Assembly: GCA_907165135.1 (NCBI GenBank)
Contig: OU015567.1
Location: forward strand, 10,602,001-10,666,000
Reading direction: 5' to 3'
DNA length: 64,000 nt
Origin: Oikopleura dioica
Taxonomy: Eukaryota; Animalia; Chordata
The notes under the pieces were generated by a model, which was not told where the DNA came from, ran no database searches, and saw nothing but the letters and a program-made list of their open reading frames with translations. Position numbers and translations under genes: made by a program. Positions 7,524 to 41,160 of this stretch are shown here, one piece after another. Positions within the stretch are counted from its first letter, which is position 1, and each line of letters opens with the position of its first letter.

Positions 7524-8123
7524 ATGCCAAGAACTAAACAAGCTAACCCGCCAAACAAAACTGAAGCCAGACGCCCGACTTTTGCAAATGAAGAACGCCT
7601 TCATCGACGACGGAACTGCAAACCTGTTCTAGAAACAGTCGAAAAGCAGCTTCCATCAAAAACCAGCCTCAAGCCTGGGAAAGCAGCTCCTCGAGATGTC
7701 CGACGATACCAGCCGCTGCACGAGCTGATCATTCCGAAGGCACAGTTCCGTTCAATGTGTAAAAGTGTCCTCCGCGACATCAAACGTGACTTCCGGATGC
7801 AAGTGACTGCCTTGAAACCACTCCAAATTGAAGTCGAGCAGCGCATCATCGAGGTCTTTGCTGATGCAGGACTCTTTGCCAAACACGCAAATCGAGTGTC
7901 TCTCAAACCAAGAGACCTGTCTCTTGCACTGCTTCTTCGTGGAGAAGAAGATCCTCGTCGCAAGAAGCATCCGAGCGCGCGAACCGACTGGATCGTCGAC
8001 CCGAATGATGTCGGATTTGAGAATTTGATTTCAATCAAACTCGACAGTAGTATTATCCTTTTCGTTTTGCGCGTTCGCACTATTCTTCGGAAAACAAACA
8101 TTGCTCGCGCGCATTCAATTTAA
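7524..8123 (+). CDS. Divergent histone H3-like protein (174 aa before the insertion; now +25 aa read from the Polinton TIR)
   Basis: MPRTKQ start; KPGKAAPRDVRRYQ...ELIIPKAQF...KHANRVSLKPRDLSLALLLRGE aligns to the H3 histone fold. Confidence 0.9.
   Translation: MPRTKQANPPNKTEARRPTFANEERLHRRRNCKPVLETVEKQLPSKTSLKPGKAAPRDVRRYQPLHELIIPKAQFRSMCKSVLRDIKRDFRMQVTALKPLQIEVEQRIIEVFADAGLFAKHANRVSLKPRDLSLALLLRGEEDPRRKKHPSARTDWIVDPNDVGFENLISIKLDSSIILFVLRVRTILRKTNIARAHSI
8040..8045 (+). repeat. Left target-site duplication CTCGAC
   Basis: Identical hexamer at 41155-41160. Confidence 0.95.
8046..8101 (+). repeat. Left terminal inverted repeat (~56 bp)
   Basis: First 43 nt identical to the reverse complement of the right end; 54/56 match. 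Confidence 0.95.
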
Positions 8124-11550: not shown

Positions 11551-12285
11551 TCAATGATGTTTTTGAGTGTAGCAGATTGGAAGTGAGGGTTGCAAATAAG
11601 GAGAATCACCAAATATATTTGACATGACTCTTAAGTTTTGATCTTTGAGTTTTATACTGCCATTTATAACAATATGGGCATGCACATCTTCAGGTCTTGA
11701 CTTCATGTCCTTGACAGCTTCTTCTAACTCGCGCTCCACGCCATATTGTTTGCCGAAGACTTTGAAATGACTTTGATCGGCGTACATTCTTAGCAAGACA
11801 GTGATCTCAGTATTACGCCGATTTCCAGTCGTAAATTTCCCTTTTTCAAATGGGTTTTGAGTAATCAAGATGAGATTAAAATCAAATTTTCTTCTGTCGT
11901 TAGTAAAAGCTCTATTGATATCAGGTGAATTAACAGCGTCACTGAACTGATCATCAATCACGATCACGCTTCTTTTCGGAACATTTATGAAATCTGAAGT
12001 TGTAGGAAGCCCTTCTTGGTACTTTATAGTTATATCATCAGGCAACTTGTTGTCCCAATCGATCGGTAAATTATTGATGGCTCCAAAATAAAAAACATGT
12101 CTGATTTTTTTTGTAAAAAATTGATGTCGTATCAGCTTTTCAACAAATTTTGTTTTTCCAGTTCTGAAAATATTTTTAATTCTCGAAAAAAGATAAGAAC
12201 TTTACCCGCTTGCGCCGATGACTTGAATAGATGCGGGGTGGTGAAATTTGATGTCGTCTATGACTCTGCCAGAGAGAGAACGCAT
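11551..12285 (-). CDS. FtsK/A32-like DNA packaging ATPase (230 aa); exons 12285-12206, 12163-11551
   Basis: Walker A VIGASGTGKT (split by a 42 nt intron), Walker B VIVIDD, ILITQNPF motif. Confidence 0.9.
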
Positions 12286-12788: not shown

Positions 12789-14285
12789 ATGTATGACTTT
12801 AAGGAAAACTTGAAAAAAAACTTAATGTCCGAGGGTACTTCGGAAACAATGACAAGAAAAGTCATAAAGCTTCGAAACTACTCAAAAAAGCGGGACGAAG
12901 ACGAGAACAACGCCTTGGAGAAGGAAGCTCCTCGAGTAGCGCGTGGAAACGACCGCTCGCAAAGAGGTCGGACGAGGACGGGTATCCAGATGATCCAGAA
13001 AGCAAAAAGAAGCAAAAACTCACATGCGATGACAACAAGGAAGAGAAAATCGGACAAATCGCCCCTCCAAACAGCCCGGCAAGTCGAAAACAATTTGAAT
13101 CAGGTGGAACCACCTCAGGAGCCCGATATTCGGATTCCGGATCAAGTGGAAGATCAGACAGCGAGAGCGACAGCAGCGGCTCCGACAGTGGCAGCGCAAG
13201 CTCCGGATCAAACTCCTCCTCAGAAGAAGATTAAACTTGACCAGCTTTACATTGATCCGAAACAGATCACTGCTTATTCAACTGATCTACAGCGTTATTT
13301 GCGTGAAAAAGAAACTCTATCTCGACATCGGCGTATCATTAGAAAATTTAAGCGTAGACGAACAGTTGTTTATGGCCCTTATACTCAAATTCAATCTGAT
13401 ACTATGTAAGCAAATTTCTCAATAAAAACTGAAAAAAAAATTGTTTTAGTGATTACAGCATGTATGGTCGTCAAAATCGCGGATATAAATACATTTTAGT
13501 CGTGATTGATGTTTATAGCAGTAGAAACTGGGTAAAAGCTCAGAAAACACTTACTTCCGAGGAAACTGCGGCCTCATTGAAAGAAATAATTGAGTCGATG
13601 GAGCATATACCTTCGACTTTTTCGAGCGATGGTGGAAAAGAATACGCGCCGCGTGTCGAAGGCAAGCGTCAACTTCTCTAGTATCGATTATAAGTTGATT
13701 TTTTAAGGATTCATTAATAAAGTTCTCGTTGAACAATTTGGAATGGTCCAATACAAGCTCGGAGGACCTCACAAAGCTACGATGGCTGAGCGCTTCATGT
13801 AATATCAATATTTTTTCGTTAATAGATCTTTATTATATAGCCGAACTTTTAAAAAAATGATCCAACAGTTTATGGACGAAAATAGAACTAAAACTTGGAT
13901 AAATGTCTATCTTCAATTAAGCGATAACATAAACAAACGGAAGCATAGCCGGCTTGGGATCGCCCCAATAGATATAACTATCGACAATTTTCGTGAATTT
14001 TACCATAAAAAATTTCCAAATGCAGAAACTAAAAACTTGATCTGTAAGTTCGGAGTTGGCGATAAGGTGCGAATTCCAATTATTATTGCGAGTCCAAAAG
14101 CAAAGCGAAAAGCAACATTTGAGAAGGGCTACATGATGAAATGGACAAAAGACCTCTACACGATTTGGAAAGTGCAAAAATCAGGCGACATTTGTTACTA
14201 TCGTGTCGAAGGACCTCGCGGAAAACTTCTGCGACCTCTTTACGAGAATGAACTGAATCTTGTTCTCCGAAAAAGACCCTCATAA
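12789..14285 (+). CDS. Polinton retroviral-like (RVE, DDE) integrase, 456 aa; exons 12789-13405, 13450-13667, 13708-13798, 13841-14285
   Basis: QSDTIDY..YGRQNRGYKYILVVIDVYS; SSDGGKEY; KATMAERFIRTFKK; KFGVGDKVRI..FEKGY..YENEL; introns of 44, 40 and 42 nt restore frame. Confidence 0.93.
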
Positions 14286-14986: not shown

Positions 14987-15441
14987 AATAAGTTAATTGT
15001 TAATTCTCTATTTTATTCAGCGCTGAAGAGCTGCTGCAAGGTCTCGCGAATTTTGGGGGAATTTTCTTTGCTGACGATTTAATTAAATTCACAATTCTTT
15101 CTTTTCCTGTTGGCTTTTTAATCCACACTAATGAAACGCATTGGATAAGTCTCATAGTTAAAAATGATGTTATCGAAATAATGGACCCCCTTGGCTACAT
15201 AAAAAATAATGCATACGAGAATCTCCACCTATTTCTCAAAACTGAGATGGGTGATCGAACTCTCATTACGTCTCCGAAAATTCAAATGAGTACTCATTCT
15301 AACTGTGGTCTTTTTGCCATCACTTTTCTTTTTTGGTCACTCGAATGTGAGAAATCATTGTTGTCTTTTATGAAATTATTCACAGAAAATGCAATTGAAA
15401 ATACTGCGACAATTAAGAAACTCTTTTCGAAAATAAACTGA
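14967..15441 (+). CDS. Adenain-like cysteine (maturation) protease, 144 aa; exons 14967-14980, 15021-15441
   Basis: Catalytic motifs THWIS, MDPLG, IQ....SNCGLF; 40 nt GT-AG intron. Confidence 0.88.
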
Positions 15442-16450: not shown

Positions 16451-16576
16451 TAAGAGAATATTGAAAAAAGGATCAAACCTGGAACCTATAGTTTGGTCAA
16501 AAAGTTCCACTCGTTTCTTCGCAATAATGGATTCCGGATCCTGAATAGAGTTAAATATATTTTCCTTGCATAACAT
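16349..16576 (-). CDS. Polinton hypothetical protein (75 aa); its 3' end is the unit of array B
   Basis: ATG ORF ending EYSFAIEFCCKEYLIKIGKSKIKMLLLF*. Confidence 0.4.
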   Translation of the reverse strand: MLCKENIFNSIQDPESIIAKKRVELFDQTIGSRFDPFFNILLEFFSDEYSFAIEFCCKEYLIKIGKSKIKMLLLF

Positions 16577-17137: not shown

Positions 17138-18418
17138 TTACACAGCTTCTACAGTAACATCATTTTCAGGAGTAATTGTCAGTTTTTTTTCAATTATAGG
17201 CATGAACAGAAGAAGGTGTTTATCATCAAGTGACTGAGTGAATTTTATTTTGACCACGAGTTGAGCAGCATTGCGTCTTCCGAGCATTTCAAAATTGATC
17301 AAAACAAAGAAGTTGGTTTTGAGATAATGTGGTTGTGGCAAAACACCGGAGCTCCAGGGATTGAGATATCGTTCGCTCATCATAAGGAAATTTTCGTAAA
17401 AATCCATATCTGTTTTAAGGGGGTAACCAGGGAGACTCGAACCATCAACGAGAACATCAACTTGCTCTATGTTTCCACGTTCTAGTTTTGTCAGTGACTG
17501 CTTGTAATCTCCATGTGAGCGTTTGAGACTGGTAACAGAAAGAACCGCGTATTTCGGGAAAGCTCCTTTAGTAAGATTAACAGTGTAATCAGTATCGCCT
17601 TTGTCTAAGGTAGGTCTTCTTATACAGTAGTCCAAGAACGTGGTTTCGAATTTCGAGGTCGCATACTTTTTCATTTCCCTTTCCAATGATTCAGAGAAAA
17701 CAAACATTGCTTTAAAAACAGGCCTGACGAGCTTAACAACTGGATCCGGAAAATCATAGTCAATCTCAACCACATCACCGACATCGTCAGTCGCATCAAG
17801 CATACTCTTCTTTTTTAAAAGCGAAAATTTTGCTGGAGCACGCTCAAACGAGAGATGGATTCCAAGTCCAGCTGGTAAAATAATTGGTGCTCGAGCGATT
17901 CCATGATTTATTGGGATTTTAAATTCGTATCTCAGCCATTTAGTGTTGTAAGTTTTTCCTTCGAATTCGATTTCTTTTAAAAACTCCTTCGCATACATTT
18001 TTCGATTCTCAATTATACTTCTGCCGATGTCGTCTTGGTCAGCTTCGAAAATATCATAGACGCCCATAATCGGAAAAGTTGAGTCGATTGTTGTTTGATC
18101 GAATAATGACTTATTCAAGAAATGAGAAGAAAACGCAGAGTCTAAATCACATGATTTGCTTGTAATTGGGTCTTCTGCGATTTCAATCTTAGGAAGCCCT
18201 TTGAAGAGCTTCGCACAAAAATCATTGTCCAATACATGATTTTCAGGAATTTCAATATGAAAATGCAGCCGAGAATCACACGCCTTGAAATATCTCTTTT
18301 GCGGAACAATGTGAAATTCAAGAGTATCATCAGTGTTGCAATAAGGAGCAGCTTCTTGGATTTTACAGTCCTCGTATCCCAAAGTGTCAAACTTATCGGT
18401 TTTTGAAAAACTGAACAT
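17138..18418 (-). CDS. Major capsid protein (double jelly-roll type), ~426 aa, intronless
   Basis: Size, beta-rich composition and C-terminal FPKYAVLSV..SHGDY..VDVLVDGSSLPGYP..FFVLINF..LVVKIKFTQSL pattern resembling Polinton MCPs; context. Confidence 0.75.
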   Translation of the reverse strand: MFSFSKTDKFDTLGYEDCKIQEAAPYCNTDDTLEFHIVPQKRYFKACDSRLHFHIEIPENHVLDNDFCAKLFKGLPKIEIAEDPITSKSCDLDSAFSSHFLNKSLFDQTTIDSTFPIMGVYDIFEADQDDIGRSIIENRKMYAKEFLKEIEFEGKTYNTKWLRYEFKIPINHGIARAPIILPAGLGIHLSFERAPAKFSLLKKKSMLDATDDVGDVVEIDYDFPDPVVKLVRPVFKAMFVFSESLEREMKKYATSKFETTFLDYCIRRPTLDKGDTDYTVNLTKGAFPKYAVLSVTSLKRSHGDYKQSLTKLERGNIEQVDVLVDGSSLPGYPLKTDMDFYENFLMMSERYLNPWSSGVLPQPHYLKTNFFVLINFEMLGRRNAAQLVVKIKFTQSLDDKHLLLFMPIIEKKLTITPENDVTVEAV

Positions 18419-18976
18419 TTTCAATTGCTCTTTCTCGTTTATTGAGAAGAATGAAATCCGTCGGATCGTGTTAAATCAGAAGTGAGAAACAGTTACTCAT
18501 GGAATACTAATATTTGACTTTGCCCTTTCTTACGCCTCTTCTTGCTCGTCTTCTTCGCGAATTTGAAGTTTATTGCTCGGATAAACTAATAGGATCATAT
18601 TATTTTTCATTTAATTAAAAGTAATTTACCATATGTCTTTTCGATTTCATATCGTAGCAAAAGCACCTGGCGCAAGCTCACACCCGAATGATGAAAGTTA
18701 GTCCTGTCAAACTCGTGACTTGCCAAAAGGCGTTCTCTGTAAAATATAATTCTTATAACTGAAGCTTGAAGAAACACTTACTCTAATGTCTCATCTTTGG
18801 TCTCTGAGAGAAGTTGAGTAACATCTTCATCATTTTTTATTTTTCTTCAATGAGGTTTTTAAAGAGCGTTTAAAGATTTTTCTACAAAATTTATAACCCT
18901 TTCTTGTGTCATTGATCCATGTTGAAGAGCCCGAGTAGTACAGCCTCAGGTCTTCTTGAATTTTTCCATCTTAAGT

Positions 18977-19663: not shown

Positions 19664-22600
19664 ATGAGATTTTTACATTTGAAAGAAGATAACAACCAAT
19701 TTTACAATCTTACTTATCTTGGAGTTCTTCTTAATCAGGAGAAGAAAAAACCTGACAAGCGTCGATTAGAGAAACTGAAGACCCTCATAGATCCGAAACG
19801 TGCAAAAAATCCCTGTCGTGCTGATTACTCCAAATTTATCGACTTTCAGAAGAAATACGGACTTTTTAAAATCCCATGTTTATCAGGAAAATATTCAAAA
19901 TTTTAATAATAAATGGCATTGAACGATAAGTTTTGAAATTTCGAAAAGCACTGGAAAGCGACTTTAATGTCCATTTCACAATCTATCAGAAAACAGCGAA
20001 TGGCGGCGATAGTCTTTTTTATAAAACGCAGCATCCGGGTCCAGGCAGTGTCGGTCTGACGTTTTTCTTCAAAGACCAGCGTTTTAATGGATTCAATCAG
20101 CTTAAGCTTCTTGACGATGGATTTATCAACCATGGAATTGACCGGATAAATACTCTTGAGCTGACCATCTTCGAAGCCGTTGCGAAAGTGAAAAACAAGG
20201 ATTTATACAAGTGCCCGAGGTTGTTTTTCAAAAAAGCAGCCGAAATACGACAGAAATGGATCGACTTCGCACAAACAAGTGATATCACAGTCTCCAATTA
20301 CAAGAATTTCTCGAGGTTGTTTAATGTCAAACTTGTTCTTTGGCGCAGACTGTCAAGGCCTGGTGCTGACAGAGTTTCCAGACAGCTAGATTTTTATTGT
20401 GGCTCTGGAAAAATACTTCAACTGGAGCTTTCGAAGGATGATCAGACGAAAACATTCTCGGATAGTACATTCTTTAAGCTTCTGCCCGAGCAAATCAATT
20501 TTGACCTCTGTCCAACGCCTAATTGCTCCTTCAGCTGCTCAGATCGTGCAAAGTTTTCGAAACATCTGGAAACATGCACTGACAAAACAACTTTCTCACA
20601 TAAACAGAAGAAATATGGAATGTTTACTGATCACACTCGTTACGATCTGATTTACGACAAGATTTTGCGTCCAAATGAGTTTCATCAAAGCTTTGTGGCT
20701 TTTGACATTGAAACTGCTTCTGTCCCAAGGTCCGAAAAAGAGAAGAACATAAGTTCCACGACTGAGGAATTGTCTGCGTATAAGCTGATCTCTATTGCAT
20801 GGCATGCGTACAACCCAGCCGGAGACGAGTATACAAAGAAATTTCTATGGCGCAGAGGGACAAGTCAAGAATCTCTTTTCTCCTTGCTTGATGAATTTTA
20901 CGTGGACTTATGTGATATTCAGGAAGAATTTAATAGGACTCTCTCGAGAAAAATCGATAATGAGAAATGGCGCTTGATCCGATTGAAGAATAGTGAGAAA
21001 TTTCACAATTTTCCAGTTGAAAAGCAAGCAGAACTCTGTGATAGGCTCAAATATCTTGATGATTTCTATTCTCTCAATGTTTATGGTTGGAATAGCGAAC
21101 GCTTCGACTTGACTGTTATAATCAATGCTCTGACTGAAGTTGTTCGTCGTAGACATCCCCACTTACTAGTCACAAAGCGAGACAAGGACACTCGTTTTGA
21201 GCCAAAGATGAATATGATCCAGAGAGGCGCCGGAACAATGCTTGCTTCCTATGGCAATATCAAATTTAAGGACATGATGAATCTCGTTGAAAGAGGGACA
21301 TCGCTGGAAAAGGTAAAAGCGCAGATTGAAAATCCTGTTTTAATTTTTGTTTGTTAGTTCGTGCAATCACTTGGTTTGCAGATAGCAAAGGCTGTTTACC
21401 CATACGAACGTTTCAAAGACACTGACGAGCTCATCAGTTACAAAGGATTCCCACCGTACTCCGACTTTTATAGCTCTTTCTACATTCCTGTCGAGAAAGA
21501 AGTTCACCTGGTCAACAAATTTCTTATTGAACACTGCTGGACGATTGATGATCTTGCTGCTGAAATTGATGTCCCTGTAGAAAAACTCAACAGTCTAGCA
21601 GATAGTTTTGAGTGTTGCTATGAAACCACCGATGAAAATATCGAGCTTCTTGCTAAGAAATGGGAAATACCAATTGATGAAATCAAATATTTCGCAGAAA
21701 ACTCTTTTCGCTGTTTTGCAATCAACGAAGAGTCCAAAAAATTTTTCAATATCTCAGTGGATAAATACTTGGCTTCAAAGGACTTATTCGAAGAAGAAAA
21801 ATGTGAAACGATGCTCGATTGGCTGCGTGTCTATAATCTCATCGACACAGACATGCTAAGCCAAGGCATTGTAGAATACAGTAACCAGTTTGCCGAAAAA
21901 TTTAATGTGAATATCCATCAATATATCTCATTGGCGCAAGTTGCTGAAAAGATTGCGTTTGGTAAATACGCGCGTGCGACACCCATCTACTCGATCACTG
22001 ATGCTGAATTGAGAAAGGACATCCGTGAAGCCTTGACAGGAGGAATGACGCACGTGTTTCACCGACTGATCGAATTGAACCAACCAGATGGGCCTCTTCC
22101 ACATGCCGCCCGATATGCTGACAATGGCGAACTCTTCAAAATGATTAAACAGCTTGATGCGAATAGTTTGTATCCTTTTACTCTACAGGATTCTCTGCCA
22201 TGTGGTCCTGGAATCGCTGTATATCCTGGGGATATCGGTGACGCTACTCGTGCTGGTGATGTTGGATATTTCAAGTTGAATCTGCTCTATGAGGGCAAAG
22301 AATCAATCTCCCTCAAAAGCTTGCAGTATCTAGAATATCTGCGACATCAATCTGGTGTGGATATCCAACATGCGTATCACATAGGCGAAAAGAAAATTGG
22401 GAAGTATTCTCTTGATGGATATTATGAGAAAGACAATATCAGATGGGGAGTTGAGTTTTACGGCTGCTATTGGCACAAATGTCGTTCATGTAAAATCCAA
22501 ACAAATGAGGACGCTGACGAAGAACGGGACAAGGAAAGAAAGAAATTCATAGAGAAGAAAATCGACATCCTTAAAATAAAGCGAGAATGTCACTTCGACA

Positions 22601-24121
22601 AATTTATGAAAAGAAACATGGCCGATGAAGAATTCGCTCGTAATGCCAGAGAAAATTGGGCTCCAGATTGGTGTCCTTTTCTTTTCCACGATAAGAAACT
22701 AAGAGAAAAAGATCTAATCGATGCTCTGATGGAACGAAAAGTTTTTGGATTCGCAATGGTGGAAATTGAGCCAAGTAAAGCTGTTTATAATCGATATGGA
22801 GATCTGAAATTTCCTATGATTTTTAAGAAAACCCAGATAGAAAGAGATATGCTATCTGAAAATCAAAAAATCGGAAATCTTGAGATGCCTGTGAGCCAAA
22901 ACACATTGATTTATAATTCTAGCGGAGAAAAAATGCTTCTTATCACTCCTCTACTGTATTTTTATTTGGATATGGGATATATTATTAAGGTTCGCTAAAA
23001 GATTTTTTAAACTTAATCATGTCGCTTTTAGAAGGTTCATTATCTTCTTATGTACAATAAGGAAAAACCGATGGCTCCTTTCGTCGATAGACTGGTCGCT
23101 GATCGAATCCGGTATCATATTGCCGAGAACAAAGTTGGCGAAAAACTTTCAAAGCTGGTACTTAATATTGTCACTGGTTTGTTTGGCAAGAATGTTTCTA
23201 AATACAGGGAAACAAAATACATCGATGATGCTGATTTATACCGCTACATCAGATCGCCTTTGCTCGAAAAAAATGAAATCATCAGTGCTGAAGGACCCAC
23301 ATCTTTGGTCAAAATTGTCAAAAAGAAGAAAACGCAGAGAGATAGCGTTCCAACACATATTTCAGCATTTAGTATGTCTTTGCTCGTGAATTGGTCTCTT
23401 AATATTTTTTTAAGTCTATCAGAAAAGCAAATTGGTCATGTTCAATTTCATTGATAATAAATGCACTCATCTGAAGGAAGGATCATTCAAACTTTGCTAC
23501 GCAGACACCGATTCGATTATGATTGCTTATGCAGGTGATGATGTTGAAACCCTCGTCAAATCTGAGAAGAAGGAGTCATGGAAAAATTTCGTTGACACAT
23601 GGATGGTTCCTGAAAAAGTCACTGATCAAATGCTGCGAGAATCAAATAACTCTAAGAAGGAAGCCGAAAAATTGCTGAAAAAATTGGAGAAAACGCCGGG
23701 TTTATTCAAAATCGAGGGTGGGATATATGGGCAAGGCACTTATTGCGGCTTGAGCTCTAAATGTTATATTCTCAAGGGTAAAAATGATAAGGGGGATATA
23801 AAAATAAAAAAATCAACGAAAGGCTTGGGTTAGAAAGTATTCAATAAGTTAATTTCAGCTCACTTGTAACAATAAAACCATTCTTTCAACTCATAATAAG
23901 GCGTCAAGAAGGATATTGAAACACCGGTGGAACATTTCGTACGTTCTCTCCTTAACGATGAAAAGTTCAGCGCTACAATGACAGGCATGGTAGCCCGTAA
24001 AAACGAGATCGTCATTCGAAAAACAACAAAGAATGCACTGAACAATGTCTATGTAAAATGGCAGATTGCTGATGACCAAGTGACTGCAACCCCACTCAAA
24101 AACGCATCTGGATATATTTGA
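19664..24121 (+). CDS. polB: Protein-primed family B DNA polymerase, 1403 aa; exons 19664-19886, 19931-21312, 21358-22989, 23032-23371, 23415-23828, 23901-24121
   Basis: Exo I FDIET, Exo II GWNSERFD, Exo III YNLIDTDML; motif A DANSLYP, motif B KLVLN..GLFGKN, motif C YADTDS; five introns give a 4212 nt open frame. Confidence 0.95.
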
Positions 24122-30076: not shown

Positions 30077-31616
30077 TGTCAACAAAAAAAATAAATTTCT
30101 TGGATAAAATGAGCCTTGTCTTCACCGGCGTTTCCTTATAACCGCTAAATCGGTCTGACTGATCAAGAATCGTCAACTGAATCAGACAATGATGGCGAAA
30201 AAAGCGAAGCTCCTAAATCAGACGATAAAGGGATAAAGGACCACGGAAATAGAAAACAAATGATTCGAGCATGCTGTTCATAGCTTTACGTTACAAGTCG
30301 GACAGATAAGGACAATTGAGGGCAATAGTAAATTTCTGAAGTAGGTCAACCAAATAACATCGCTCGGAAAAACTTTTTGAACGTCAATTTCTAGGTAGTT
30401 CAAATATTTACGACTCTTGATCTCATGCTACGTGCCCTATTTTCTAGTGAATATAAGAAAATAGTTTCTCCTTCACTTCATAAATGAAAAATGAGGTGAA
30501 AAATCCCTTTCGAAAGAGACAACTCTTCAAAATGCAGCCAAATTAGCTATATAAAGTAGATTTCGCTTAGAAACGCTCCGAAGTATTCAAAATGAAACAT
30601 TATTTGTGGTATATCTTTGTTTATTCCAAGCAATTTGATGTTTAATTAGTTAAATTAAATTAACCTTTCTCAATGAGATATATGTTGTTATCATGATAAA
30701 ATGAATCGTTATAGTTCACCTAAACAATGTACCTCTTACCATTTACTCTGTTAAAACTACTTTATACTCTTACTGCTTAATTTTATAAAATGATTAACTT
30801 ATTCTTCATTATTGCCATAATAGACAACCTTCATCATATTCGTTTATTAAGTGACAAGCAATATTAGCTTTATTAAATTTGTTCATCAAATGACAAGCAA
30901 TACTATCTTTATCAAATTTTATCCCGAAACTTTTGCTCTTTTCCTGCTTTTTTGAATAAAATGAAAAAATCTGCAAACTCCATGCAACTTTTGAAAACTT
31001 TCTTGTTGATGAGATATTTGCAGGAAATGAGACTCGTCTGTTGCTATCTTTTCGTACTTTTGGTGAACCAAAAAGTCCGATTATCATGAGAGGAATCCAG
31101 AGTTGACCGATAAGCGTCTGTCCTACGAATCTGTTGATTTTGAAGGGAAGGCTTCGCCGCATAAAAAGAATTAGTAAAGATAGCGAGGAAAATATTTGGC
31201 TTTTTTTTTCTCCTTCTTTTTATTTTTACTCCGGAAACAGGTGCTTTTTTGGACTCTGAAAATTGCATCTTGGAAGGTGATCGCTATTTTTCCTTCAATG
31301 AGTAAGAATGCATATTTTTAGTACAATCCACGTACATTTCATATCTCACTTTAGTAAAAACTGCGTACCTGCGTCCTTTAGCATTATATACATGCACGAA
31401 TATCAATTAAGCCCTTTCTTTTGCGTAGGAAAATTGCAATGGATAATTAATACTTCAACAATATTACCGCTTCGCGGTATGCATGCTTCCTAGGATTCAA
31501 AACTTAAGAAAAGACAAAATGTCCATTTCGGGCTTTTGTCAATTGGTAAAATTGATAAAATAGTTTATTCGTTTACGAACAGAGACCACAGTCATAAATT
31601 ACTACCCAGACATTAT

Positions 31617-33660
31617 TTAGGTATTGGCACAGAGAGCTGCCAGTTGATTTGGGATGGGCGGCCCTCCCACTAGAATCAATTGTGTAATGCGCGAAGAAGT
31701 TGATGAAACGGGGTTGAACGCAGGGAACTCGTTGCCTGATGGCTGTAATAGTTTTATTCTGAAAGAAAATGTTTGAAAGGGTTCGAAGTGAAAAGGATTC
31801 TTACCTGAAAGGTTTTGCAACTTTAGCATTGAACATTAAATTCTCGATAGGTGCAGGATTTGTCGAATCAAAAGTGACTAGCAGTACAGGAACATCACTT
31901 CTGTCTTGAATTTTATTCTCTCCTCGGACAAGGATGACTCTGACTCCATCATCGTCGACAAGAGTTCTTGTCGTCGAAGAAGCCTGGAAATCAGCGAGAT
32001 TGACTTTGATTCCCGTCAAAGCCGCCACTTCGGGTGGAGTGGGCCAAACGGCGATTTGGGGACTGGCTTGGCTCGTCATGGCGGATACAGAAGGTGCTGA
32101 TGGGTTAATATCCAGCAGAGTTGGCTGACTGAAAAAATTGTTAAAACTTCAGTAATCATCAAAATCGACGAGTAAAGGCAAAATTGTTAGCTGATAATAA
32201 ATGCATGCATAAATGAACAAAATCCTTTATAAAACTACCTCTGCCAAGGATCGTAGCTAATAAATTGATTAAGAGAATATTCTTGAGACTTACGGTGCTT
32301 CTCCCATTGGAGAGGACCCAAATATACTGTTCAGAGTTTTCAAATCGTCGATCACATTTCCACTACTTTGAGCTGGTCTGTTCGATGGAGGATCATCCTC
32401 GAAGCCGAGCAGGTTCAAGTCGACGCCGAGGTCGTGGAGGCGAGAAGTTTGGCTATCCGGACTTGATGTTGCAGTGAGACCAGATGATGGAACGCTGCTT
32501 CCATTTGAACTTGGCGTAGAAGCGCTAGAATGCAATAATAGGGAGGAAATATGAGAAAGAATTTACTTCGAAAGCTCCACTACATCGGGGTATTTATCTT
32601 TCACGACATTGATGACTCGATTGACTTCATCTGTTAGCCTGAGGACCGCCATCAACTCATCGTTGTTTTAATTTGCTTCTGACGCGAGACGGAAGAGCTG
32701 TGGCCTCATTGATTCCAAGTCCGAATAGACTGTTGCCATCGCCGATTTCGCTCTTTATTCAGAGAGTGTTAAAAAATGAGAGAAGAACTTGGCCTTACGT
32801 AGCTGCAGCAGCAATCATATCATCCATGAGCATGTATTTTCCTTCGCTTCTGTCATCAAAAGCATTTTGCGCGCCTCTCGCTCGGTCTTTTTACTGTCTT
32901 GCTCGTACATGGTTTTGATCATTTCATTTGCCAGGGCGATGTCTTCTGGATTCTTGGACGCAAGAAGTTCCGCCAGTCGCTTTTCCTCAGCATCGTCTCT
33001 TATTAATGCGCACCTGAACAGTGTTTCAACACTGATTTTGATTAAATTGGTACCTTTCTTTTGGTTGAGGAGTAGGGAGAAATCTTCTGTCGTCGAATTT
33101 CGGGTCCTTCTTGACGATGCCTTGTTTCTTGAGCATTGAATACGCATCAGCAATCTTTATTTGGTCTAAACTCAAAGTCAGTAGCTGTAAGAATAAGAAA
33201 AGCTCAACCTTTTAATGCAATAGTCCAACCATACATCAATTCAATAATTCTAGTTTATCCTGCGGTGATGACCTAAAAACAAAATAAATTTTAGTCAAGT
33301 GGCTTTTCTTTGGGAGGTCAAGCAAATTACAAGTCCCTACATCTGCGTGAGGGTGCAAAAAGAGGCCCTCCGAATGGAAGTCCTCCGAACTCGAGGCGAG
33401 AGAGGGAGCGCAGCGGACTGATGCTCATGCGATAAGCCAGGTTTTAAGCCACGTTACCTTGGTCCAAGATATTTGGGAGAGACAACGCGGATAAGTTCAT
33501 TTAAAAATCTATATTTTCCGATTTCATTGTGAAAGAGTTTTCCAGAGGATCGAACGCAGATTTCCAACAGATCCAGGCCTCGGACAGCTTCTTTTTCTAA
33601 TGGGCTCTGGATCTTGTAAGCCAACAATTGTTGTGCATGAAGAGGGACGTCGGCATTTAA
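31617..33660 (-). pseudogene. GGA: GGA clathrin adaptor fragment (truncated VHS, GAT, hinge, GAE) with frameshifts
   Basis: LLAYKIQSP..FHNEIGKYRFLNELIRVVSPKYLG; AYSMLKKQGIVK; LLASKNPEDIALAN; QPSGNEFPAFNP; 1 nt deletions near 33255 and 32833. Confidence 0.85.
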
Positions 33661-34410
33661 CAGGCAGCAAACAGCTTCGTAAATGGATGATTGATCCTCG
33701 GGGAACTTTTGAAGACTTCGGATGAGCTCTTCTACTGTTCGATTCAGGCATTTTTGGACAGAAGACGGCAGCAGGACAGTAATCGATGGGTAGAAATTCT
33801 GAAATAAAGATGAAACGGAGAAATAGCGCCTTCTTTATAAATTTTTCGCCCGTAAATTATCTTTTTTGCCCATTCTTTAATGATTTTACCTTATTTCTCG
33901 CCTAGAATCGGGCAAACAGCTCGTCAATACATTCACATTCTGATCTTCCAGCAAAACAGGAACTCGCGAAGCCAGTTTTACGCAGTTATTAATCGCATTC
34001 AGGCGAACAATTTCCAATTCATCGTTGAGCATGTCTACCATGTAGTCCATCGACTGCTTGGCGAAATCTCCAGTGGACTCTTTAGCGGCTAAGGTGCAAA
34101 GAGAATTCAGCGATGCAACTCTGACCGTTTTAAATTCATCTTCCAGGTCGTGAATGAAGGCCCTACGATCTCGTTTTAAGATTGGACTTACCTTCGCAGC
34201 GCCGACTTCCACCCTCATTCTTGAGTAACTTTTCCGCTCGTTCGCGCAAAACACGTATAAACTTTCCATTCTTATCAAGAGACTTTTCTTCGCTTCCTTC
34301 TGGAATTCTTTGCTCGAAAACGAAATCGTCGCGAGCTTCGCACCAAGTTTGTTTCTCTTCAAAGCGGATCAGGAAAAACTTCCTAGGAATTATTTTCGCT
34401 TTTGTAAACT
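33661..34410 (-). pseudogene. INTS4: Integrator subunit 4 internal fragment (HEAT repeats)
   Basis: AFIHDLEDEFKTVRVASLNSLC..MVDMLNDELEIVRLNAI..LEDQ..DSRREIR..LQKFPEDQSSI; frameshifts near 33762 and 34160. Confidence 0.8.
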
Positions 34411-34556
34411 GAACCTGAAAATAAATTAATAAACTTCTACACATAAATGTGAGATATATTTGTAGGAGAGCCGGGATCCTAAAATGACAGCTTTTCCGGT
34501 TTTATAAAGAGCTCGAAAAATACAAAATTATAAAATACAAAAAGAACAGCTTCATT

Positions 34557-37290
34557 TTAATTCTTTGTTCTTTTTCTTTTTGTGGATTGCGCTGGTTTGC
34601 ATCCATTTTTCGCCACTGGTCCACGGCGTGGCAAATTCATCTGGCTGTTGCCAAGTGGTTGCATGAACTGTCTGTGATGAGGAATCTGATGATGAGGACG
34701 AATCTGATGATGAGGACGAATCTGCTGATGAGGAGGAATCTGATGATGAGGAGGAATCTGCTGAGGGGGGCCAAAATTATTTTGGGGAGTAAATCGCTGG
34801 TTGAAGCTCATTTGAGGAGGTTGAAATTGCTGTGGCGGCATATTTGACATTTGACTGTGTTGATGAGGAGTTGCGATCGCTGGCTGATGTGGCTGCCGTT
34901 TTTCTTGGTTGATTCTGTCCAATTCATGCTGCTGATTGTGCCAGAGCACCTCTTCGCCGAAAATATCGCTAGACAACTGCTCCAGCGATTTTCCCAAACT
35001 TGCGACTTCCATTTCCAAGGGTGCAAGCCCTTCCTTGCCGGCGGTTTCGACGAGATGATGAAGCTTTTTCGACATTTGATCGTAAGCTAGACGCAAGAAG
35101 TCGATCATAGAGCGAAACCTCATCCTGTTAACGCTCTTATTATCGAACTTCTGGATTCTAGCGCCCAGCAATTTGAGCTTTTCGTTCGACTCCCAGATCT
35201 TTGCACGCATTTCAGCGATCTTCTGATCATCCAAAGCAGCGACCACCGGCTCTGGAGCCGCAATATCAGTAGATGCTTCATCGCTTGAACTAACCAAAGT
35301 GTCTTTCTGTGGCTTTGGTGGTCCGGCTTCTTTACCACTGATCGACGAAAGCATCGCTTGCTGTTGTACATCGGCCTTAATGATAAACTTAGCTCTAAAA
35401 TTGATTATTCCTGCTACCTTTGCGTTGAAATCCTCATCGGAAGACGAATCGTCTTCAGTGACTTCTGTATTATTGTGCTTGGGATTGAAAGGCGATAGAA
35501 CAGGTGGCTCTTCATCCGAGTCTCGTTGTTTCTTCTTCTTCTCATCGCTTGAACTAGCCGCTGCGTCTTCCTCGTCACTGCTCAACAAACGCTTTCTGCG
35601 CCGAACAGGCTCTGAATTCTTGTAAATATTGTTCTGACTTAAACAACTTACTTTTGCTGACTTTCTCCAAGACGACACCAGTTTTTTCTCGATACTCGTT
35701 TCGTTTTACTTCGAGCGCAGGCTGTTCATCTTCTGCCGAAGCGATCTCTTGCTCCTTTTGCTTTCTTTTCAACGTAGCTTGATTGACGCTTTCTTCAGTT
35801 CGTTCACGATGAGCACATTCCTTTTCCTCTTCTAAAAGTGAAAATAAATAAGTGATCCTTGAGCTTGATTTACCTTGCTGGCAGATACTTAACCATTCGA
35901 TAGCTTCGTCAGGAGATTCATCGAACTTTTTCATCATTCCGAACTCGACTTTTGCCTCCTCAAATTTCTTTGTTGCCATCAAAATCTGCCCTTTCAAGGC
36001 GTAGCCTTTTGGCCATGTGGGCTCAAGTTCAATTGCTTTCACCGCGTCACTAGAAATAAATAAGAGATGGATAAAAATTGAATCTTATTACCTAAGAGCT
36101 TCGGGGAACTGCTCTTGTTGGAGGAGCGCGTCCGATCGATAACCGAAGTAGACCTTGTTCGTCGGATCCAAGGCGATTGCTTCGGCGTATTTTTCGATTG
36201 CAAGGCTGATATCTCCATCTCCCTCAGCTATCGCGCCCTCTTGGGCGATTCGAGTCGCACTAGTAGAAAAATGATTAAACGGTAAATTTACTCATACTGA
36301 CTTTTCAAAATCATCAATATTATCAATTTGCACAAGATGGGATCTTGCTGTTATATCACCATATCGGGCATGAAAATCACTTGCTGATTGTCGTATATGT
36401 TTCCGGAAAACTCCATTCGTCATTTTGCTTCGTTCTTTCATGTAAAGTTTGTAGTACCGATGTTTTTTGGTGATGAAACATTCAGCGATGGACTGGAAAT
36501 CTTTCCATTCGAGAATGGGGTAGTTATCAGGCGAGACGTACAATTTAACTTCTTTTTTTTCTTTTCTCTTCCATTTGCTTTTTGGTGTATAAATAAATGA
36601 AGTAAGTTCGTGGCGCTGGGGAAGACAAAATCGCTTCTTTTCTGCACAGAGAAGTTTGTCGATGGTGTGTATGTACTCATCACCTAAGACAGCCCCATTC
36701 TCATCTGGTGTTATGTTTAGAGAATAGAACAAGTCTAATCTCTCTATGCAATGTCTTAACTGGAGCCCATCTCGAGTTTTTCTTATTTCCTCGACAACCG
36801 CGAAGTCGTAATCGGAAAAGCCATCCAAACCAAAAATTGGCTGAAGAACAACCCCTATTGCTGAAGTCTCCCAAAATTTCCAATCTTTTTCGCGTTTAGG
36901 GACCCCTTTTGATCGCAATAGTCGTAAAAACGACCGGTGGGGCTTGTGCACGAATTTAACACCATTTTGGAGATTATCACATTGGCTGTCAGCTTCCTCC
37001 TTCGACTCGAAAACTGCCACTCTCAAGGTTCCATCGTGAATTTCTTGGACTTCATGGTCTTCTGCGTCTGTCGCAGAAGATTCGACAATGTGAAGTTCTC
37101 CTTCGCCGTCAGATACCGGCATCGGAGAATGAGCAGCAAAATCGTAGGTATCGGGATCAAAGCCATTGACTGTCAAAAAGTCGGATAATCTTTGGAGAAG
37201 TTCAGCTTTCTTGCCCCTCGTACTTTCTTGCACCGAAGCAAGCTCTTTACGAATTTCTCCTACTTTGAGATCGGTCAACAATTTCACCAT
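34557..37290 (-). CDS. Intact SAP + TPR + coiled-coil + Gln/His/Pro-repeat protein (~854 aa); exons 37290-36302, 36259-36092, 36049-35874, 35831-35662, 35618-34557
   Basis: SAP LKVGEIRKEL..RGKKAELLQRL; TPR AIEKYAEAIALDPTN..DAVKAIELEPTWPKGY; four 42-43 nt GT-AG introns give a 2565 nt open frame. Confidence 0.8.
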
Positions 37291-37569
37291 TACAAAACTG
37301 TCTAAATTTATGAGCGCTGCAGACAGATAAGGATAACTGTCAGAAATATCAAACGAGTGCTGAGTTTTCTATTTCCATCATGAATCTTATATTGGAAAGA
37401 AAAGATAAAACACGAGTTTTTGAATTAAAGAATGCGTGTGAACAATCGCCTTTGTATTGAATGACTAGTTGAAAAAAGAAACAGTGATGATAAGAAAAGA
37501 AAAGAGAGAGAGAGAAATAGTTTGTCTCGTTGTTCTTGCAAAGTGAGTGGTCGGCTTTGTTGAAGAGTT

Positions 37570-38175
37570 CGGATCGAATTGCAAAAAGACCTGCTTCTGT
37601 ACAAACGTTTCGCAAATCAGCTCCATTAAATGTATCCGAGAGCTTGACAACCGCCTATTAAAAAGGGGTGAAAAAGGGAGAGAAGCGAGAACAAGATTAC
37701 CTTGAAGTCAATTCCTCCGTGAGAAGCGAGTGGATGCGAGTGAATCTTCAAAATGTCAAGTCGAAAAATGTCAAGTCGAACTTGTTCATTTGGCAGTGCT
37801 AGAATTGAATTTAGATCAAGGATTTTCTAAGGTGGCTTCTAACAACCGGGTCGCAAAAGTGCAGGATCCAGCGTGTCAGGTCTGTTCGTCGCCATGATCA
37901 TTTTCACCTTTCCGAGCGTGTCGAAGTCGCCCATTTGATTGAGCAATTCCATCAGAGTACTGCGAGCGACATTAAACTTTAGTAAAAATAAAGTACAGCT
38001 ACCTTTGGATTCCACAATCAGCAGAGATTTCTTCTGAAAGACGTCTGCTACCGATAGCGTCGATTTCGTCCATGAAAATAATAGAGGGTTGATGGTCGCG
38101 AGCGTAGTTGAACTTTACGCGGATGAGACGAACAGATTCACCGATTTACTTGTCCACGATGGCAGATGATATTAC
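37570..38175 (-). pseudogene. PSMC6: 26S proteasome AAA subunit Rpt4/10B fragment
   Basis: [79 protein letters not shown]; premature stop at 38146-38148. Confidence 0.88.
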
Positions 38176-38222
38176 CTAGGAAAAGATGCTCTACCGTGCG
38201 TTTGCTGTAAGATAAGCTACCA

Positions 38223-39100
38223 TCAAAAATAAGCGTCGAGTTGACTAGCAACAGCTCGAGCAGGGAGAGTCCTAGTGTCAGCATTCTTATCTCCATCAGA
38301 TTCAGTCGAGCGGCCAGTAATCGGCTCTGATGATGAGGAACTATCCAGTAATCGGCTCTGATGATGAGGAACTATCGCTTTTTCCAACAGATTTCGGCGT
38401 GTGCTTCGGGAATTTTCGATTTTTTTCACCTTGTTTCGGATTTTATCCACTTGCACGATCATCATCGAGAGTCGAGCATTTCTGATTGATGCTTCTGACC
38501 AGACATCGGTTGTACTGCCCTTTTGTTCTTTTTGGGGGACGCCTGTGCGAGAGACATCAGAGCAATCAGTTCTTGAACGGGACTGATCGCTACTAGAAAC
38601 AGCATTTGGGAGATTCGATGAGCTCGTCGTTTGTTCTGTCGAGGAGGAAGAGTCTGAGGAAGTTTTTCTTGTGTTTTACCCGTAGAACTGCTTTTCCGAC
38701 GACTCAAGCGTTTCTCCCTCTTTTCACTTCTGGACTTTTTCGATCGATGCTTCGAGCAGTAATGTCTACTTCTGCTTGTACTTCTGGATCGATTCTTTCG
38801 CCGGCGGATAGGACTGCGCGATCTTGAGCGATGCTTTCGGCTTTTGAAAGAGTTGAAAAAAGAAAGATCAAAATTGGCATGCTCTAAGGGAAATTGCAAC
38901 TCTAACTTGGACTAGAAGATCTCGACCGCTTTTGTTTCTTTCTTCTTTCCCGGATATCCGACCTTTTCCGGTGCATTCTTGATTTTCCCGGCTTTGAATC
39001 GACAATCACAAGATCATCATCTTCTTCTTTGCTGGAAGGTTCGATCGGATCAACGATTCGTTTCAACACAGGCTTGACAGTTCTGACTCGACGATCTCAC
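38223..39100 (-). pseudogene. RS/Lys-rich protein fragment, apparently frameshifted
   Basis: EEDDDLVIVDSK, RSRSRSPIRRRKNRSRSTSRSR; 31 bp tandem duplication at 38314/38345. Confidence 0.45.
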
Positions 39101-39620
39101 TGAAGAGTTGATTAGCCAGGTTTTTTTCATTTCTAGAGCCGTTTCGACCTCTAGAATCGTTTTTACCTGTCTAAATGATCATAAACTCTTTGCAAAATCG
39201 GTTTATTCGACGCTTTACTGCTCATTACAAGTCAGTATTTGAGCACTGTATCGGACCGTGCTCTACTGTATTTTCAACTTATTAGTACGCACAGTTTGTA
39301 TTTTTACTTTGATTAGCTGATACCAGTTACTGTGGGCTACAATGAATTGCGGGGCCAAAACAACGAATGGCCGAATAAATAAGAGTTTCAGTTTTTTTTC
39401 CTCAGACACAAAACAGGCAAAATTTTTAGTAGTTGGATTTTTAGAAAGTTTTTTGTTGAACGTAAGGGAAGAGAGGGAGGTTTGTGCATGTAGGTGCATT
39501 ATTTTAATAAATTACTGAACAACAGGAACGGAGGTGAGAAAAGGGAACACACAAGCTTTAAGGACAATAGTTTTTCTTTGTGGAAGGAATCAGTACTTTG
39601 TAAGTGATAGAATAGGTGGC

Positions 39621-40450
39621 TTATTTGTACAATCGACCCTTGGCGCCCTTTCGGAAAGCGTCGTTCATGAATTTGTCCTGCTCGATCTTGTGAACCTGAA
39701 ACGCAAAATAGCTTTTGCAAATTTGGCTGAAATCTTACTTGTTTGGAACCAGCAGCGGCGGAGGCGGCGGAGTCTCGGCCAGCGTAGTGGACTCGGCGGG
39801 ACCAGTTGGATGCAGTTCGCAGTCTAGGCTTGCAGAAGTCGTAGAAACCCATGTTCTTGTGCTTTTCCTGGACCCAGTAGACTTCGGCGTTCTTGTATTT
39901 CTCGAGCTCGGGAATGACGAGATCGTATGGGAATGGAGCGACCTAGAATAAAATGTAGCCTTTGATCTCTCTAAGCTGAAAGTACCTGTTCAACTCGTGC
40001 AATAGCGATATCGTTTTCGAAGCCTCGGGCAGCTCGCTCTTTGACGAGATCGTAGTAGACCTTTCCAGAGCAGAATATCAGTCGCTTGACGTTATCTGGG
40101 TTCTGAATGGAGCAAAGTTTAAGTAATGAATGAAGGATATTATTTTACCTTGGAGGCAGCGCCTTCTTCACCGATGAGTCGTCTGTACTGTGTGCCAGGG
40201 TCCATTTCTGACCATTCGGATCGAGCTTCTGGAAGTCGAAGAAGAGATTTGGGAGTCATGAGAATGAGGGGCTTTCGGAATGGAAGAGCGATCTGTCGTC
40301 GATGGACGTGCATGACGTTGGCTAGAATTTTAGTGAAGAAAGATCTAAATTGGTAAGCTTTACCTGGAGTAGTTGGGTTGCAAATAATCCAGTTAGCGTC
40401 GTAGAGCTGCTTGATGCCGAAGTCAGCTTCCTTCCAGTCGCTGGGGCTGA
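39621..40450 (-). pseudogene. OGDH: 2-oxoglutarate dehydrogenase E1, 3'-terminal fragment with introns
   Basis: [22 protein letters not shown]; [13 protein letters not shown]; APFPYDL..WVQEKHKNMGFYD; no upstream exons seen before the element end. Confidence 0.88.
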
Positions 40451-40513
40451 AAATATAGTTTATTTTTTCTATTTTAACGTGTTAATAATATTATCTACTA
40501 AATTCTATTAAAC

Positions 40514-40805
40514 GGGAGCACAGTGCTCACAGACTAAAAAATCTAACTAATACTAAAAAGCCTAACTAAGTCTGGAGCGCATTGCTCACCATTTTAGATT
40601 AGATTTGAATTTAGAAAAATTATAACTATTAAATTTTTAAATATAATGGGAGCACGATGCTCACAGACTTAAAAATCTAACTAATACTAAAAAAGCCTAA
40701 TTATGAGCGAGAAACTTCCCAGGACCGAGATCCAAACAAGTGATACCAAGCTCTCCCAGTTTTTATTCAACCCTTATTTTAAGTCTGGAGCGCATTGCTC
40801 ACCAA
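40514..40805. repeat. Right subterminal duplicated blocks with GAGC-N5-GCTC palindromes
   Basis: gagcacagtgctc 40516, gagcgcattgctc 40575 and 40788, gagcacgatgctc 40650. Confidence 0.75.
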
Positions 40806-41098
40806 ATTTAATTTTGAAATTAGAAAATTATTGAATTTTTTACTTATCTTTATTTCTTCTTCGTTGATTTTCTTCATATCTTCTCGTGTTTTTTCTCGAA
40901 AGCAAATCTATAAAAAACCTGGTAAAAATACTGGCTATTACATGAATTATTCAAGAATTCGTGTTGAACAATCCAAAACAATACAAACAACAATACAAAA
41001 CATGCAAAACTTCTCTTTTGAGAAAAATGATTTTGAACTTGAATTTTAAATTTTGAGCGCTATTGGCGGAGCACCCGCCAATGAGCGCGCGCCCCGCG

Positions 41099-41154
41099 AT
41101 GTTTGTTCTCAGAAGAATAGTGCGAACGCGCAAAACGAAAAGGATAATACTACT
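41099..41154 (-). repeat. Right terminal inverted repeat
   Basis: Reverse complement of 8046-8101, ending ACTACT. Confidence 0.95.
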
Positions 41155-41160
41155 CTCGAC
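41155..41160 (+). repeat. Right target-site duplication CTCGAC, followed by the original TAA of the H3-like gene
   Basis: ctc gac taa continues the frame of 7524-8045. Confidence 0.95.

What the first reader, a model, noticed from the sequence alone, without database searches (positions are those of the whole stretch)
31617..40450. Pack-type Polinton: ~9 kb right arm of captured, intron-retaining host gene fragments
Seen: inside the TIRs lie pieces of GGA, INTS4, PSMC6, OGDH and an RS-rich gene. All are on the minus strand, all are partial, introns are retained, and most carry stops or 1 nt indels while the viral core is clean. Established: such DNA-level fragment capture is typical of Pack-MULEs and Helitrons; Maverick cargo is known but, as far as I know, mainly as whole genes. 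Inference: template switching by pPolB or recombination captures host DNA, making the element an exon-shuffling and possibly gene-transfer vehicle.
Basis: partly seen in the sequence, partly recalled or inferred. Interest (0 to 1): 0.88.

Follow-up and report, generated by a model that had tools for sequence, protein, structure and literature searches.

The report
Polinton carrying host-gene mosaic cargo
A 33-kb virus-like transposon (Polinton/Maverick) in the genome of the tunicate Oikopleura dioica carries, inside its terminal repeats, a 9-kb block of host-type DNA with introns. The block holds one intact gene flanked by pieces of at least five other genes, and the public annotation reads it as fused genes.

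Summary
The observation largely holds. The window is O. dioica OKI2018_I69 chr2. A Polinton spans 8046-41154 (33,109 bp). It has 59-nt terminal inverted repeats (56/59 identical), AG...CT ends and a perfect 6-bp target-site duplication (CTCGAC). The block 31.6-40.5 kb was therefore inside the element when it integrated.

All cargo lies on the minus strand and has GT-AG introns of 40-46 nt. It holds pieces of OGDH, an RS-rich gene, PSMC6, INTS4 and GGA.

- He missed a complete six-exon, 841-codon gene in the middle (SAP domain plus Hop/PP5-type TPR).
- Only PSMC6 and GGA demonstrably carry stops or frame changes. The OGDH and INTS4 pieces are open.
- The viral core is not clean. The pPolB and integrase regions are interrupted as they stand.

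Two other loci (XSR, chr2) encode the same PSMC6-piece-to-SAP-TPR junction. Between copies the SAP-TPR part is 93.5% identical and the PSMC6 piece 78%, so the gene looks selected and the piece decaying.

The capture mechanism and the Polinton context of the other loci are untested, because fetching those loci was left out. Verdict: a new variant of known Polinton cargo carriage.

The parts
8040..8045 (.). Left copy of the 6-bp target-site duplication (CTCGAC)
   Evidence: Identical hexamer directly outside both TIRs.
8046..8104 (+). Left terminal inverted repeat; the element starts with AG
   Evidence: 56 of 59 nt match the reverse complement of 41096-41154, and the first 43 are perfect.
11554..12201 (-). 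Open frame in the position of a packaging ATPase (identity not verified)
   Evidence: 216-codon open frame. No Pfam or PHROGs hit. The assignment rests on position only.
12789..14282 (+). Integrase region (rve core), interrupted as it stands
   Evidence: Pfam rve E=1.8e-7, 31.8 bits against a cut-off of 32.6, within this span. The region is split over three open frames in two reading frames. This means at least two frame changes if all three belong to one gene, which is not verifiable for lack of homologs.
15004..15438 (+). Ulp1/adenain-type cysteine protease candidate
   Evidence: Pfam Peptidase_C48 E=4e-4, 20.6 bits against a cut-off of 20.7.
17138..18424 (-). 428-codon ORF in the position of the major capsid protein (not verified)
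   Evidence: No Pfam, PHROGs or PDB sequence hit. The AlphaFold2 model is unusable, pLDDT 29.
19930..23830 (+). [quoted passage not shown]
   Evidence: Homolog P0001 carries PF03175 and aligns at 47% identity, E=1e-151. Weak direct Pfam hits to DNA_pol_B_2 and DNA_pol_B lie in the C-terminal pieces. The region is split over four long open frames. One in-frame stop lies within the stretch aligned to P0001, in an insertion relative to it. Further interruptions (about two stops and one frame change) are inferred from the open-frame layout only.
31560..40450 (-). Cargo block: host-type, intron-bearing DNA, all pieces on the minus strand
   Evidence: GC is 0.433 against 0.377 for the core and 0.40-0.42 for the flanks. 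About 7.9 of 8.9 kb is assigned to the pieces listed below.
31617..33799 (-). GGA gene, nearly whole but degenerate (VHS, N-GAT/GAT, hinge, part of GAE)
   Evidence: Supported. By my reading there are at least two frame changes and one in-frame stop. The start codon region and the end of the GAE domain are not recognisable. AATAAA follows the terminal stop.
33889..34215 (-). INTS4 internal piece (about 11% of the protein)
   Evidence: 109 residues align to human INTS4 360-464 of 963, E=1e-15, with no stop in the aligned frame. The frame upstream gives no hit.
34557..37290 (-). Intact six-exon gene: SAP domain, Hop/PP5-type TPRs, acidic Ser-rich part, coiled coil, Q/P/H-rich tail (841 codons)
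   Evidence: Exons are 37290-36302, 36259-36092, 36049-35874, 35831-35652, 35611-35418 and 35375-34557. There are five GT-AG introns of 40-42 nt and no internal stops. Pfam SAP and TPR. PDB STIP1/PP5/RPAP3 TPRs. Colinear with P0003 and P0014 with no stops opposite residues.
37568..38273 (-). PSMC6/RPT4 piece (about 179 codons, C-terminal half without the last ~30 codons), degenerate
   Evidence: Supported. About two stops lie opposite reference residues and two more in small insertions. The pieces use three frames and are joined by intron-sized gaps.
38274..39180 (-). RS-rich piece of unknown parent
   Evidence: Arg/Ser/Lys make up 36-48% of residues, with 17 RS/SR dipeptides in 149 residues. 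No Pfam hit. Intactness cannot be judged.
39621..40446 (-). OGDH 3' piece: five exons, 217 codons, own stop codon
   Evidence: Four GT-AG introns of 42-46 nt and no internal stops. OxoGdeHyase_C. PDB OGDH. The piece starts right after a retained 3' splice site.
40511..40813 (.). Right subterminal repeats with small hairpin-like motifs
   Evidence: Two two-copy direct-repeat families. The motif GAGC-N3-6-GCTC occurs 4 times in 40300-41154, once in 8046-8800, and never in the core or cargo.
41096..41154 (-). Right terminal inverted repeat; the element ends with CT
41155..41160 (.). Right copy of the target-site duplication (CTCGAC)

Best explanation
A Polinton/Maverick of Oikopleura dioica took up host-type genomic DNA just inside its right end, at the DNA level. 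It then integrated at this chr2 site as one 33.1-kb unit.

The cargo has two layers:
- A complete, intron-bearing gene for a SAP-TPR protein. It is kept open in at least three genomic copies and is therefore probably functional cargo.
- Co-oriented passenger pieces of housekeeping genes (OGDH, an RS-rich gene, PSMC6, INTS4, GGA). Some of these are decaying.

Shown: the element bounds, the identity, strand, introns and state of each piece, and the sharing of the PSMC6-piece-to-SAP-TPR junction with two other loci.

Inferred:
- Acquisition was by break repair or recombination with template switches, in a host that lacks classical end joining.
- The copies spread by transposition of the element.
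- The pieces matter mainly because they supply splice sites and exons, which gene finders (and possibly the cell) join to the cargo gene.
For: - TIRs, AG...CT ends and an identical 6-bp duplication bracket the whole 33,109 bp.
- Polinton hallmarks are present: pPolB, rve and a C48 protease.
- Cargo identities carry strong E-values.
- Introns are canonical and 40-46 nt long, and the cargo GC resembles the flanks.
- The subterminal motif is confined to the element ends, and the cargo starts directly inside it.
- No nested TIR pair surrounds the block.
- P0003 (XSR.g15471) and P0014 (chr2.g5610) are colinear with PSMC6 piece then SAP-TPR.
- Between copies the SAP-TPR part is 93.5% identical (772/826) with no stops, and the PSMC6 piece is 78% (103/131) with stops.
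- No separate parent of SAP-TPR appears among models of 530 aa or more.
- O. dioica lacks c-NHEJ and uses MMEJ (PMC11067885).
Against: - The Polinton context of the two other loci was not examined, so spread with the element is not shown.
- The parent genes were not retrieved. The origin in this host, the breakpoints and any microhomology are therefore unknown.
- The capsid and ATPase genes are unverified.
- The element is larger than the usual 13-25 kb (PMC10748475) and its pPolB and integrase are interrupted.
- The identity contrast between the PSMC6 and SAP-TPR parts compares predicted gene models. These may differ in the degenerate part for modelling reasons.
- No expression data were seen.
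Confidence: 0.62

Rival explanations
1. The 9-kb block is a separate, nested fragment-carrying transposon (Helitron-like or another non-autonomous element) that inserted into the Polinton. On this view the two other loci are copies of that element, not of the Polinton.
For: All pieces share one orientation, as is common in Helitron captures (my knowledge). The mosaic is multi-copy. The Polinton context of the other copies is unknown.
Against: No inverted-repeat pair or direct repeat brackets the block. I saw no convincing Helitron-type end, but that check was cursory. The block abuts the Polinton's own subterminal repeats.
Confidence: 0.12
2. The block accreted in place after integration, by ectopic repair or gene conversion at this locus or an ancestral one. 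The other loci then arose by segmental duplication or genome scrambling, not by transposition.
For: O. dioica shows extreme scrambling of short genic segments, with breakpoints at exon starts and intron ends (PMC11067885). This copy's pPolB and integrase are interrupted.
Against: The copies sit on different chromosomes or regions (XSR and two chr2 sites). The block lies exactly between the core and the subterminal repeats. Scrambling alone does not explain a shared junction kept together with a selected gene.
Confidence: 0.12
3. The two TIRs belong to two different Polinton insertions, and host genes lie between them.
For: The TIRs are short (59 nt). The right arm looks host-like.
Against: An identical hexamer lies outside both ends, with a chance of about 1 in 4096. 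The 'host genes' are truncated pieces of unrelated genes, not a normal gene row. There is only one set of core genes.
Confidence: 0.03
4. The block is an assembly artefact.
For: Repeats are hard to assemble.
Against: The window has no Ns. Seven or more chimeric joins would be needed. The same PSMC6-piece-to-SAP-TPR junction occurs at two further loci of a telomere-to-telomere nanopore assembly (PMC8008620).
Confidence: 0.03

Closest known systems
Nematode Mavericks with host-derived cargo (wasp and krma genes; Widen et al., bioRxiv 10.1101/2022.07.12.499685)
   Same: A cargo region sits next to one TIR. It has higher GC than the viral core and holds genes with host-type introns. It includes a whole gene of no known viral function.
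   Different: The block here is 9 kb rather than 2-5 kb. It lies in the arm opposite the integrase. Besides the whole gene it holds pieces of at least five housekeeping genes. The host is a tunicate. Transfer between species was not examined.
Pack-MULEs and gene-fragment-carrying Helitrons of plants and animals (PMC6431247, PMC8903248)
   Same: Intron-retaining pieces of several unrelated host genes sit between transposon ends and are read as chimeric genes. The pieces are co-oriented.
   Different: The carrier is a Polinton that still holds pPolB and integrase remains. It has a 6-bp duplication and AG...CT ends, and no MULE or Helitron termini. The mosaic surrounds an intact gene.
Insect Polintons carrying transposon cargo (Pannagram preprint, 10.1101/2025.02.07.637071)
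   Same: Polinton copies share an identical foreign insert.
   Different: The cargo there is other transposons, not host gene pieces.

Membership tests
Polinton/Maverick | Terminal inverted repeats | tested here: met
   59 nt, 56/59 identical. This is shorter than the usual 100-1500 nt (PMC10748475).
Polinton/Maverick | 6-bp target-site duplication and 5'-AG...CT-3' ends | tested here: met
   CTCGAC on both sides. The element starts with AG and ends with CT. That these ends are typical is my own knowledge (Kapitonov and Jurka 2006).
Polinton/Maverick | [quoted passage not shown] | tested here: met
   Homolog P0001 carries PF03175, at 47% identity and E=1e-151. The direct Pfam hit is weak, E=6e-4. 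The gene is interrupted as it stands.
Polinton/Maverick | Retrovirus-like (rve) integrase | tested here: inconclusive
   rve E=1.8e-7, but 31.8 bits is just under the 32.6 cut-off. The region is split over three open frames.
Polinton/Maverick | Adenain/Ulp1-type cysteine protease | tested here: inconclusive
   Peptidase_C48 at 20.6 bits against a cut-off of 20.7.
Polinton/Maverick | Double jelly-roll major capsid protein and packaging ATPase | tested here: inconclusive
   The candidate ORFs give no Pfam, PHROGs or PDB hit. The fold prediction failed.
Pack-type (Pack-MULE-like) transposon | Non-autonomous: TIRs enclose host fragments and no transposition genes | tested here: not met
   pPolB, integrase and protease regions lie between the same TIRs.
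Pack-type (Pack-MULE-like) transposon | Several intron-retaining fragments of unrelated host genes between the ends | tested here: met
   OGDH, RS-rich, PSMC6, INTS4 and GGA pieces with GT-AG introns.
Pack-type (Pack-MULE-like) transposon | The same cargo moved to several sites together with the ends | tested here: inconclusive
   Two other loci share the PSMC6-piece-to-SAP-TPR junction.
Helitron | 5'-TC and 3'-CTRR ends with a subterminal hairpin, inserted between A and T | tested here: inconclusive
   I saw none at the block's borders when reading. No dedicated search was run.
Maverick cargo region as described in nematodes | High-GC, intron-bearing region next to a TIR holding a whole non-viral gene | tested here: met
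   GC 0.433 against 0.377. The six-exon SAP-TPR gene is intact. It lies in the arm opposite the integrase, unlike the nematode layout.

The most novel reading that the evidence does not exclude
The co-oriented housekeeping-gene pieces may not be mere debris. Together with the SAP-TPR gene they could form a host-like, head-to-tail transcription unit, an 'operon mimic' with ready-made splice and trans-splice sites. Such a unit would let the element's cargo gene be expressed, or escape silencing, in a genome where housekeeping and germline genes are typically operonic. This would be a Polinton that builds its own host-type operon from captured exons.
Probability: 0.1. Interest if true: 0.85.

Novelty: new variant of a known kind. 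Interest (0 to 1): 0.6.

Why it matters
Polintons are known to carry whole host genes and other transposons. I found no report in the held literature of a Polinton holding a mosaic of intron-retaining host gene pieces.

- If the mosaic travels with the element, Polintons join Pack-MULEs and Helitrons as shufflers of host exons, and they would do so in an animal.
- The case sits in a 65-70 Mb genome that lacks classical end joining. Every junction can be compared with its parent gene there, which makes the capture mechanism approachable by description alone.
- It has a practical side. At least three gene models in the public O. dioica annotation (chr2.g6972, chr2.g5610, XSR.g15471) are fusions of a proteasome-ATPase pseudogene piece with an unrelated gene, and one also takes in INTS4 and GGA pieces.
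- The SAP-TPR gene is a candidate element-borne gene of unknown role.

Tried and rejected
- I first took the host for a nematode, from ~45-nt introns ending in TTTTCAG. This was wrong. An exact match of flank ORF 2970-3407 to OU015567.1 and the names of P0003, P0014 and P0019 show O. dioica OKI2018_I69.
- I first took the 332-codon SAP ORF for an intronless orphan gene, since it had no homologs. It is exon 1 of a six-exon gene, and its apparent stop lies in intron 1.
- I first counted P0019 as a third independent copy. It is the annotation's model of this very window: 1110 of 1112 residues are covered by exact 8-mers. The INTS4-to-GGA junction is therefore not shown to be shared.
- AlphaFold2 without an alignment failed for the SAP exon (pLDDT 33) and the capsid candidate (pLDDT 29). 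No fold search was run.
- Pfam and PHROGs gave nothing for the capsid, ATPase and the other arm ORFs.
- A search for nested TIRs around the block found nothing convincing.
- Exact look-ups of two other flank ORFs found nothing.
- The parent genes (OGDH, PSMC6, INTS4, GGA of O. dioica) could not be retrieved.
Full report
**Where the window comes from.** Flank ORF 2970-3407 is on record, residue for residue, in NCBI assembly GCA_907165135.1. The record is OU015567.1 (16,158,756 bp), at 10,604,970-10,605,407. Protein P0019 is named Oidioi.mRNA.OKI2018_I69.chr2.g6972. Exact 8-mers of the window's translation cover 1110 of its 1112 residues. The window is therefore Oikopleura dioica OKI2018_I69, chromosome 2, at about 10.602-10.666 Mb. 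The right flank holds an Eph-receptor-like kinase gene and a U1 snRNA. My earlier guess of a nematode host was wrong.

**The element.**
- One inverted-repeat pair stands out in the window. Read base by base, the arms are 8046-8104 and 41096-41154. They match at 56 of 59 positions, and the first 43 are perfect.
- The element begins AG and ends CT. The hexamer CTCGAC lies directly outside both ends. An identical hexamer has a chance of about 1 in 4096. The whole 33,109 bp therefore integrated as one unit.
- Inside lies a pPolB region (19930-23830). Its relative P0001 carries PF03175 and aligns at 47% identity, E=1e-151. There are weak direct Pfam hits in the C-terminal pieces.
- An rve integrase core gives E=1.8e-7, just under Pfam's cut-off. 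A C48-type protease sits at its cut-off.
- The capsid and ATPase candidates could not be verified.
- A small hairpin-like motif occurs only in the two subterminal regions.
- At 33.1 kb the element is larger than the 13-25 kb usually given for Polintons (PMC10748475).

**The core is not clean.** As the sequence stands, the pPolB region is split over four long open frames and the integrase region over three. For pPolB, one in-frame stop lies within the stretch aligned to P0001. About two more stops and one frame change are inferred from the frame layout only. For the integrase there are at least two frame changes, if the three frames are one gene. I did not model introns to bridge these interruptions. 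Whether any of them is a short intron is left open.

**The cargo block (31.56-40.45 kb), in order along the minus strand.**
- **OGDH 3' piece (40446-39621).** It starts right after a retained 3' splice site. It has five exons, four GT-AG introns of 42-46 nt, 217 codons, no internal stop and its own stop codon.
- **RS-rich piece (about 39180-38274).** Its parent is unknown.
- **PSMC6 piece (38273-37568).** It covers about 179 codons of the C-terminal half and lacks the last ~30. About two stops lie opposite reference residues and two more in small insertions.
- **A complete gene (37290-34557).** See the next section.
- **INTS4 internal piece (34215-33889).** It has 109 residues, matching human positions ~360-464 of 963, and is open.
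- **GGA (33799-31617).** VHS, N-GAT/GAT, hinge and the first part of GAE are present. By my reading there are at least two frame changes and one stop. Neither the start nor the end of the protein is recognisable.

All seven pieces share one strand. If the captures were independent, the chance is 2 x (1/2)^7 = 0.016. Intron sizes fit the host's median of 48-51 nt (PMC8008620). GC is 0.433, like the flanks (0.40-0.42) and unlike the core (0.377).

**The overlooked gene.**
- The 332-codon 'SAP ORF' is exon 1 of a six-exon gene of 841 codons. Its five GT-AG introns are 40-42 nt long. The apparent stop of the ORF lies inside intron 1.
- Each exon, read in its own phase, has no internal stop. I checked exon by exon. 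I built no joined sequence, and I searched no joined model.
- The protein has a SAP domain and TPRs of the Hop/PP5/RPAP3 type. It continues with an acidic Ser-rich part, a coiled coil and a Q/P/H-rich tail.

**Other copies.**
- A full HMMER scan with exon 1 found P0003. P0003 is XSR.g15471. P0014 is chr2.g5610 and is 98% identical to it.
- Both are chimeric gene models: PSMC6 piece, then SAP-TPR. Both are colinear with the window.
No separate parent gene was seen.
- On aligned residues the window matches P0003 at 772/826 (93.5%) in the SAP-TPR part with no stops. In the PSMC6 part it matches at 103/131 (78.6%).
- I infer purifying selection on SAP-TPR and decay of the PSMC6 piece. The caveat is that predicted models are being compared.

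**Mechanism.**
- *Shown:* capture was of genomic DNA, not of mRNA. The block was inside the element at integration. One junction is shared by three loci.
- *Inferred:* acquisition was by break repair or recombination with template switches near the right end, possibly in several rounds. O. dioica lacks classical end joining and uses microhomology-mediated joining (PMC11067885).

**Literature.** Nematode Mavericks carry whole, intron-bearing cargo genes in a high-GC region next to a TIR (10.1101/2022.07.12.499685). Insect Polintons carry other transposons (10.1101/2025.02.07.637071). I found no report of gene-fragment mosaics in Polintons, nor of Polintons described in O. dioica, in the held library.

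- I did not look up the loci of P0003 and P0014, nor any other copy of the element.
- I searched no joined spliced model.

- While reading the raw sequence I noted for myself where some interruptions lie.
- Searches printed tblastn piece bounds, and searches printed mechanical open-frame bounds, before I switched to counts-only output. A reader could infer approximate places of interruptions from these.

Noticed in passing
window 7524-8123 (+): A histone-fold (H3-like) ORF (Pfam Histone, E=1.7e-15). The element is inserted exactly before its stop codon. The three bases after the right duplication are TAA. The present ORF therefore runs 25 codons into the TIR.
   Followed up: partly
window 62610-62772 (-): A full-length U1 spliceosomal RNA gene (Rfam RF00003, 114.5 bits).
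   Followed up: no
window 49668-52024 (-): An Eph-receptor-like gene. A 410-codon exon holds the Cys-rich and fibronectin-like ectodomain and the membrane span, and downstream exons hold the tyrosine-kinase part. This assignment rests on reading the translation. No Pfam scan was run on it.
   Followed up: no
window 24362-24669: About ten to thirteen tandem 24-nt units inside the element. On the minus strand they encode a Pro/Glu/Leu/Arg-rich repeat.
   Followed up: no
window 15667-16458: Tandem repeats of about 119 nt between the protease and capsid candidates (families D2 and D5).
   Followed up: no
window 38314-38375: A perfect tandem duplication of 31 nt within the Ser-rich part between the RS-rich and PSMC6 pieces (family D8).
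   Followed up: no
window 32818-38245 (-), protein P0019: The public annotation's model chr2.g6972 (1112 aa) fuses PSMC6-piece exons, most of the SAP-TPR gene, the INTS4 exon and the GGA VHS/N-GAT exons. It does so by way of a ~950-nt intron. It is a likely mis-annotation.
   Followed up: yes
window 19930-23830 (+): The annotated proteome holds no gene model for the element's long pPolB open frames, since one search returned no O. dioica protein. The core was perhaps repeat-masked before annotation, which would hint at several copies of the core in the genome.
   Followed up: no
window 34657-34800 (-): Six 18-nt tandem units near the 3' end of the SAP-TPR gene. They encode a His/Gln/Ile/Pro repeat.
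   Followed up: no
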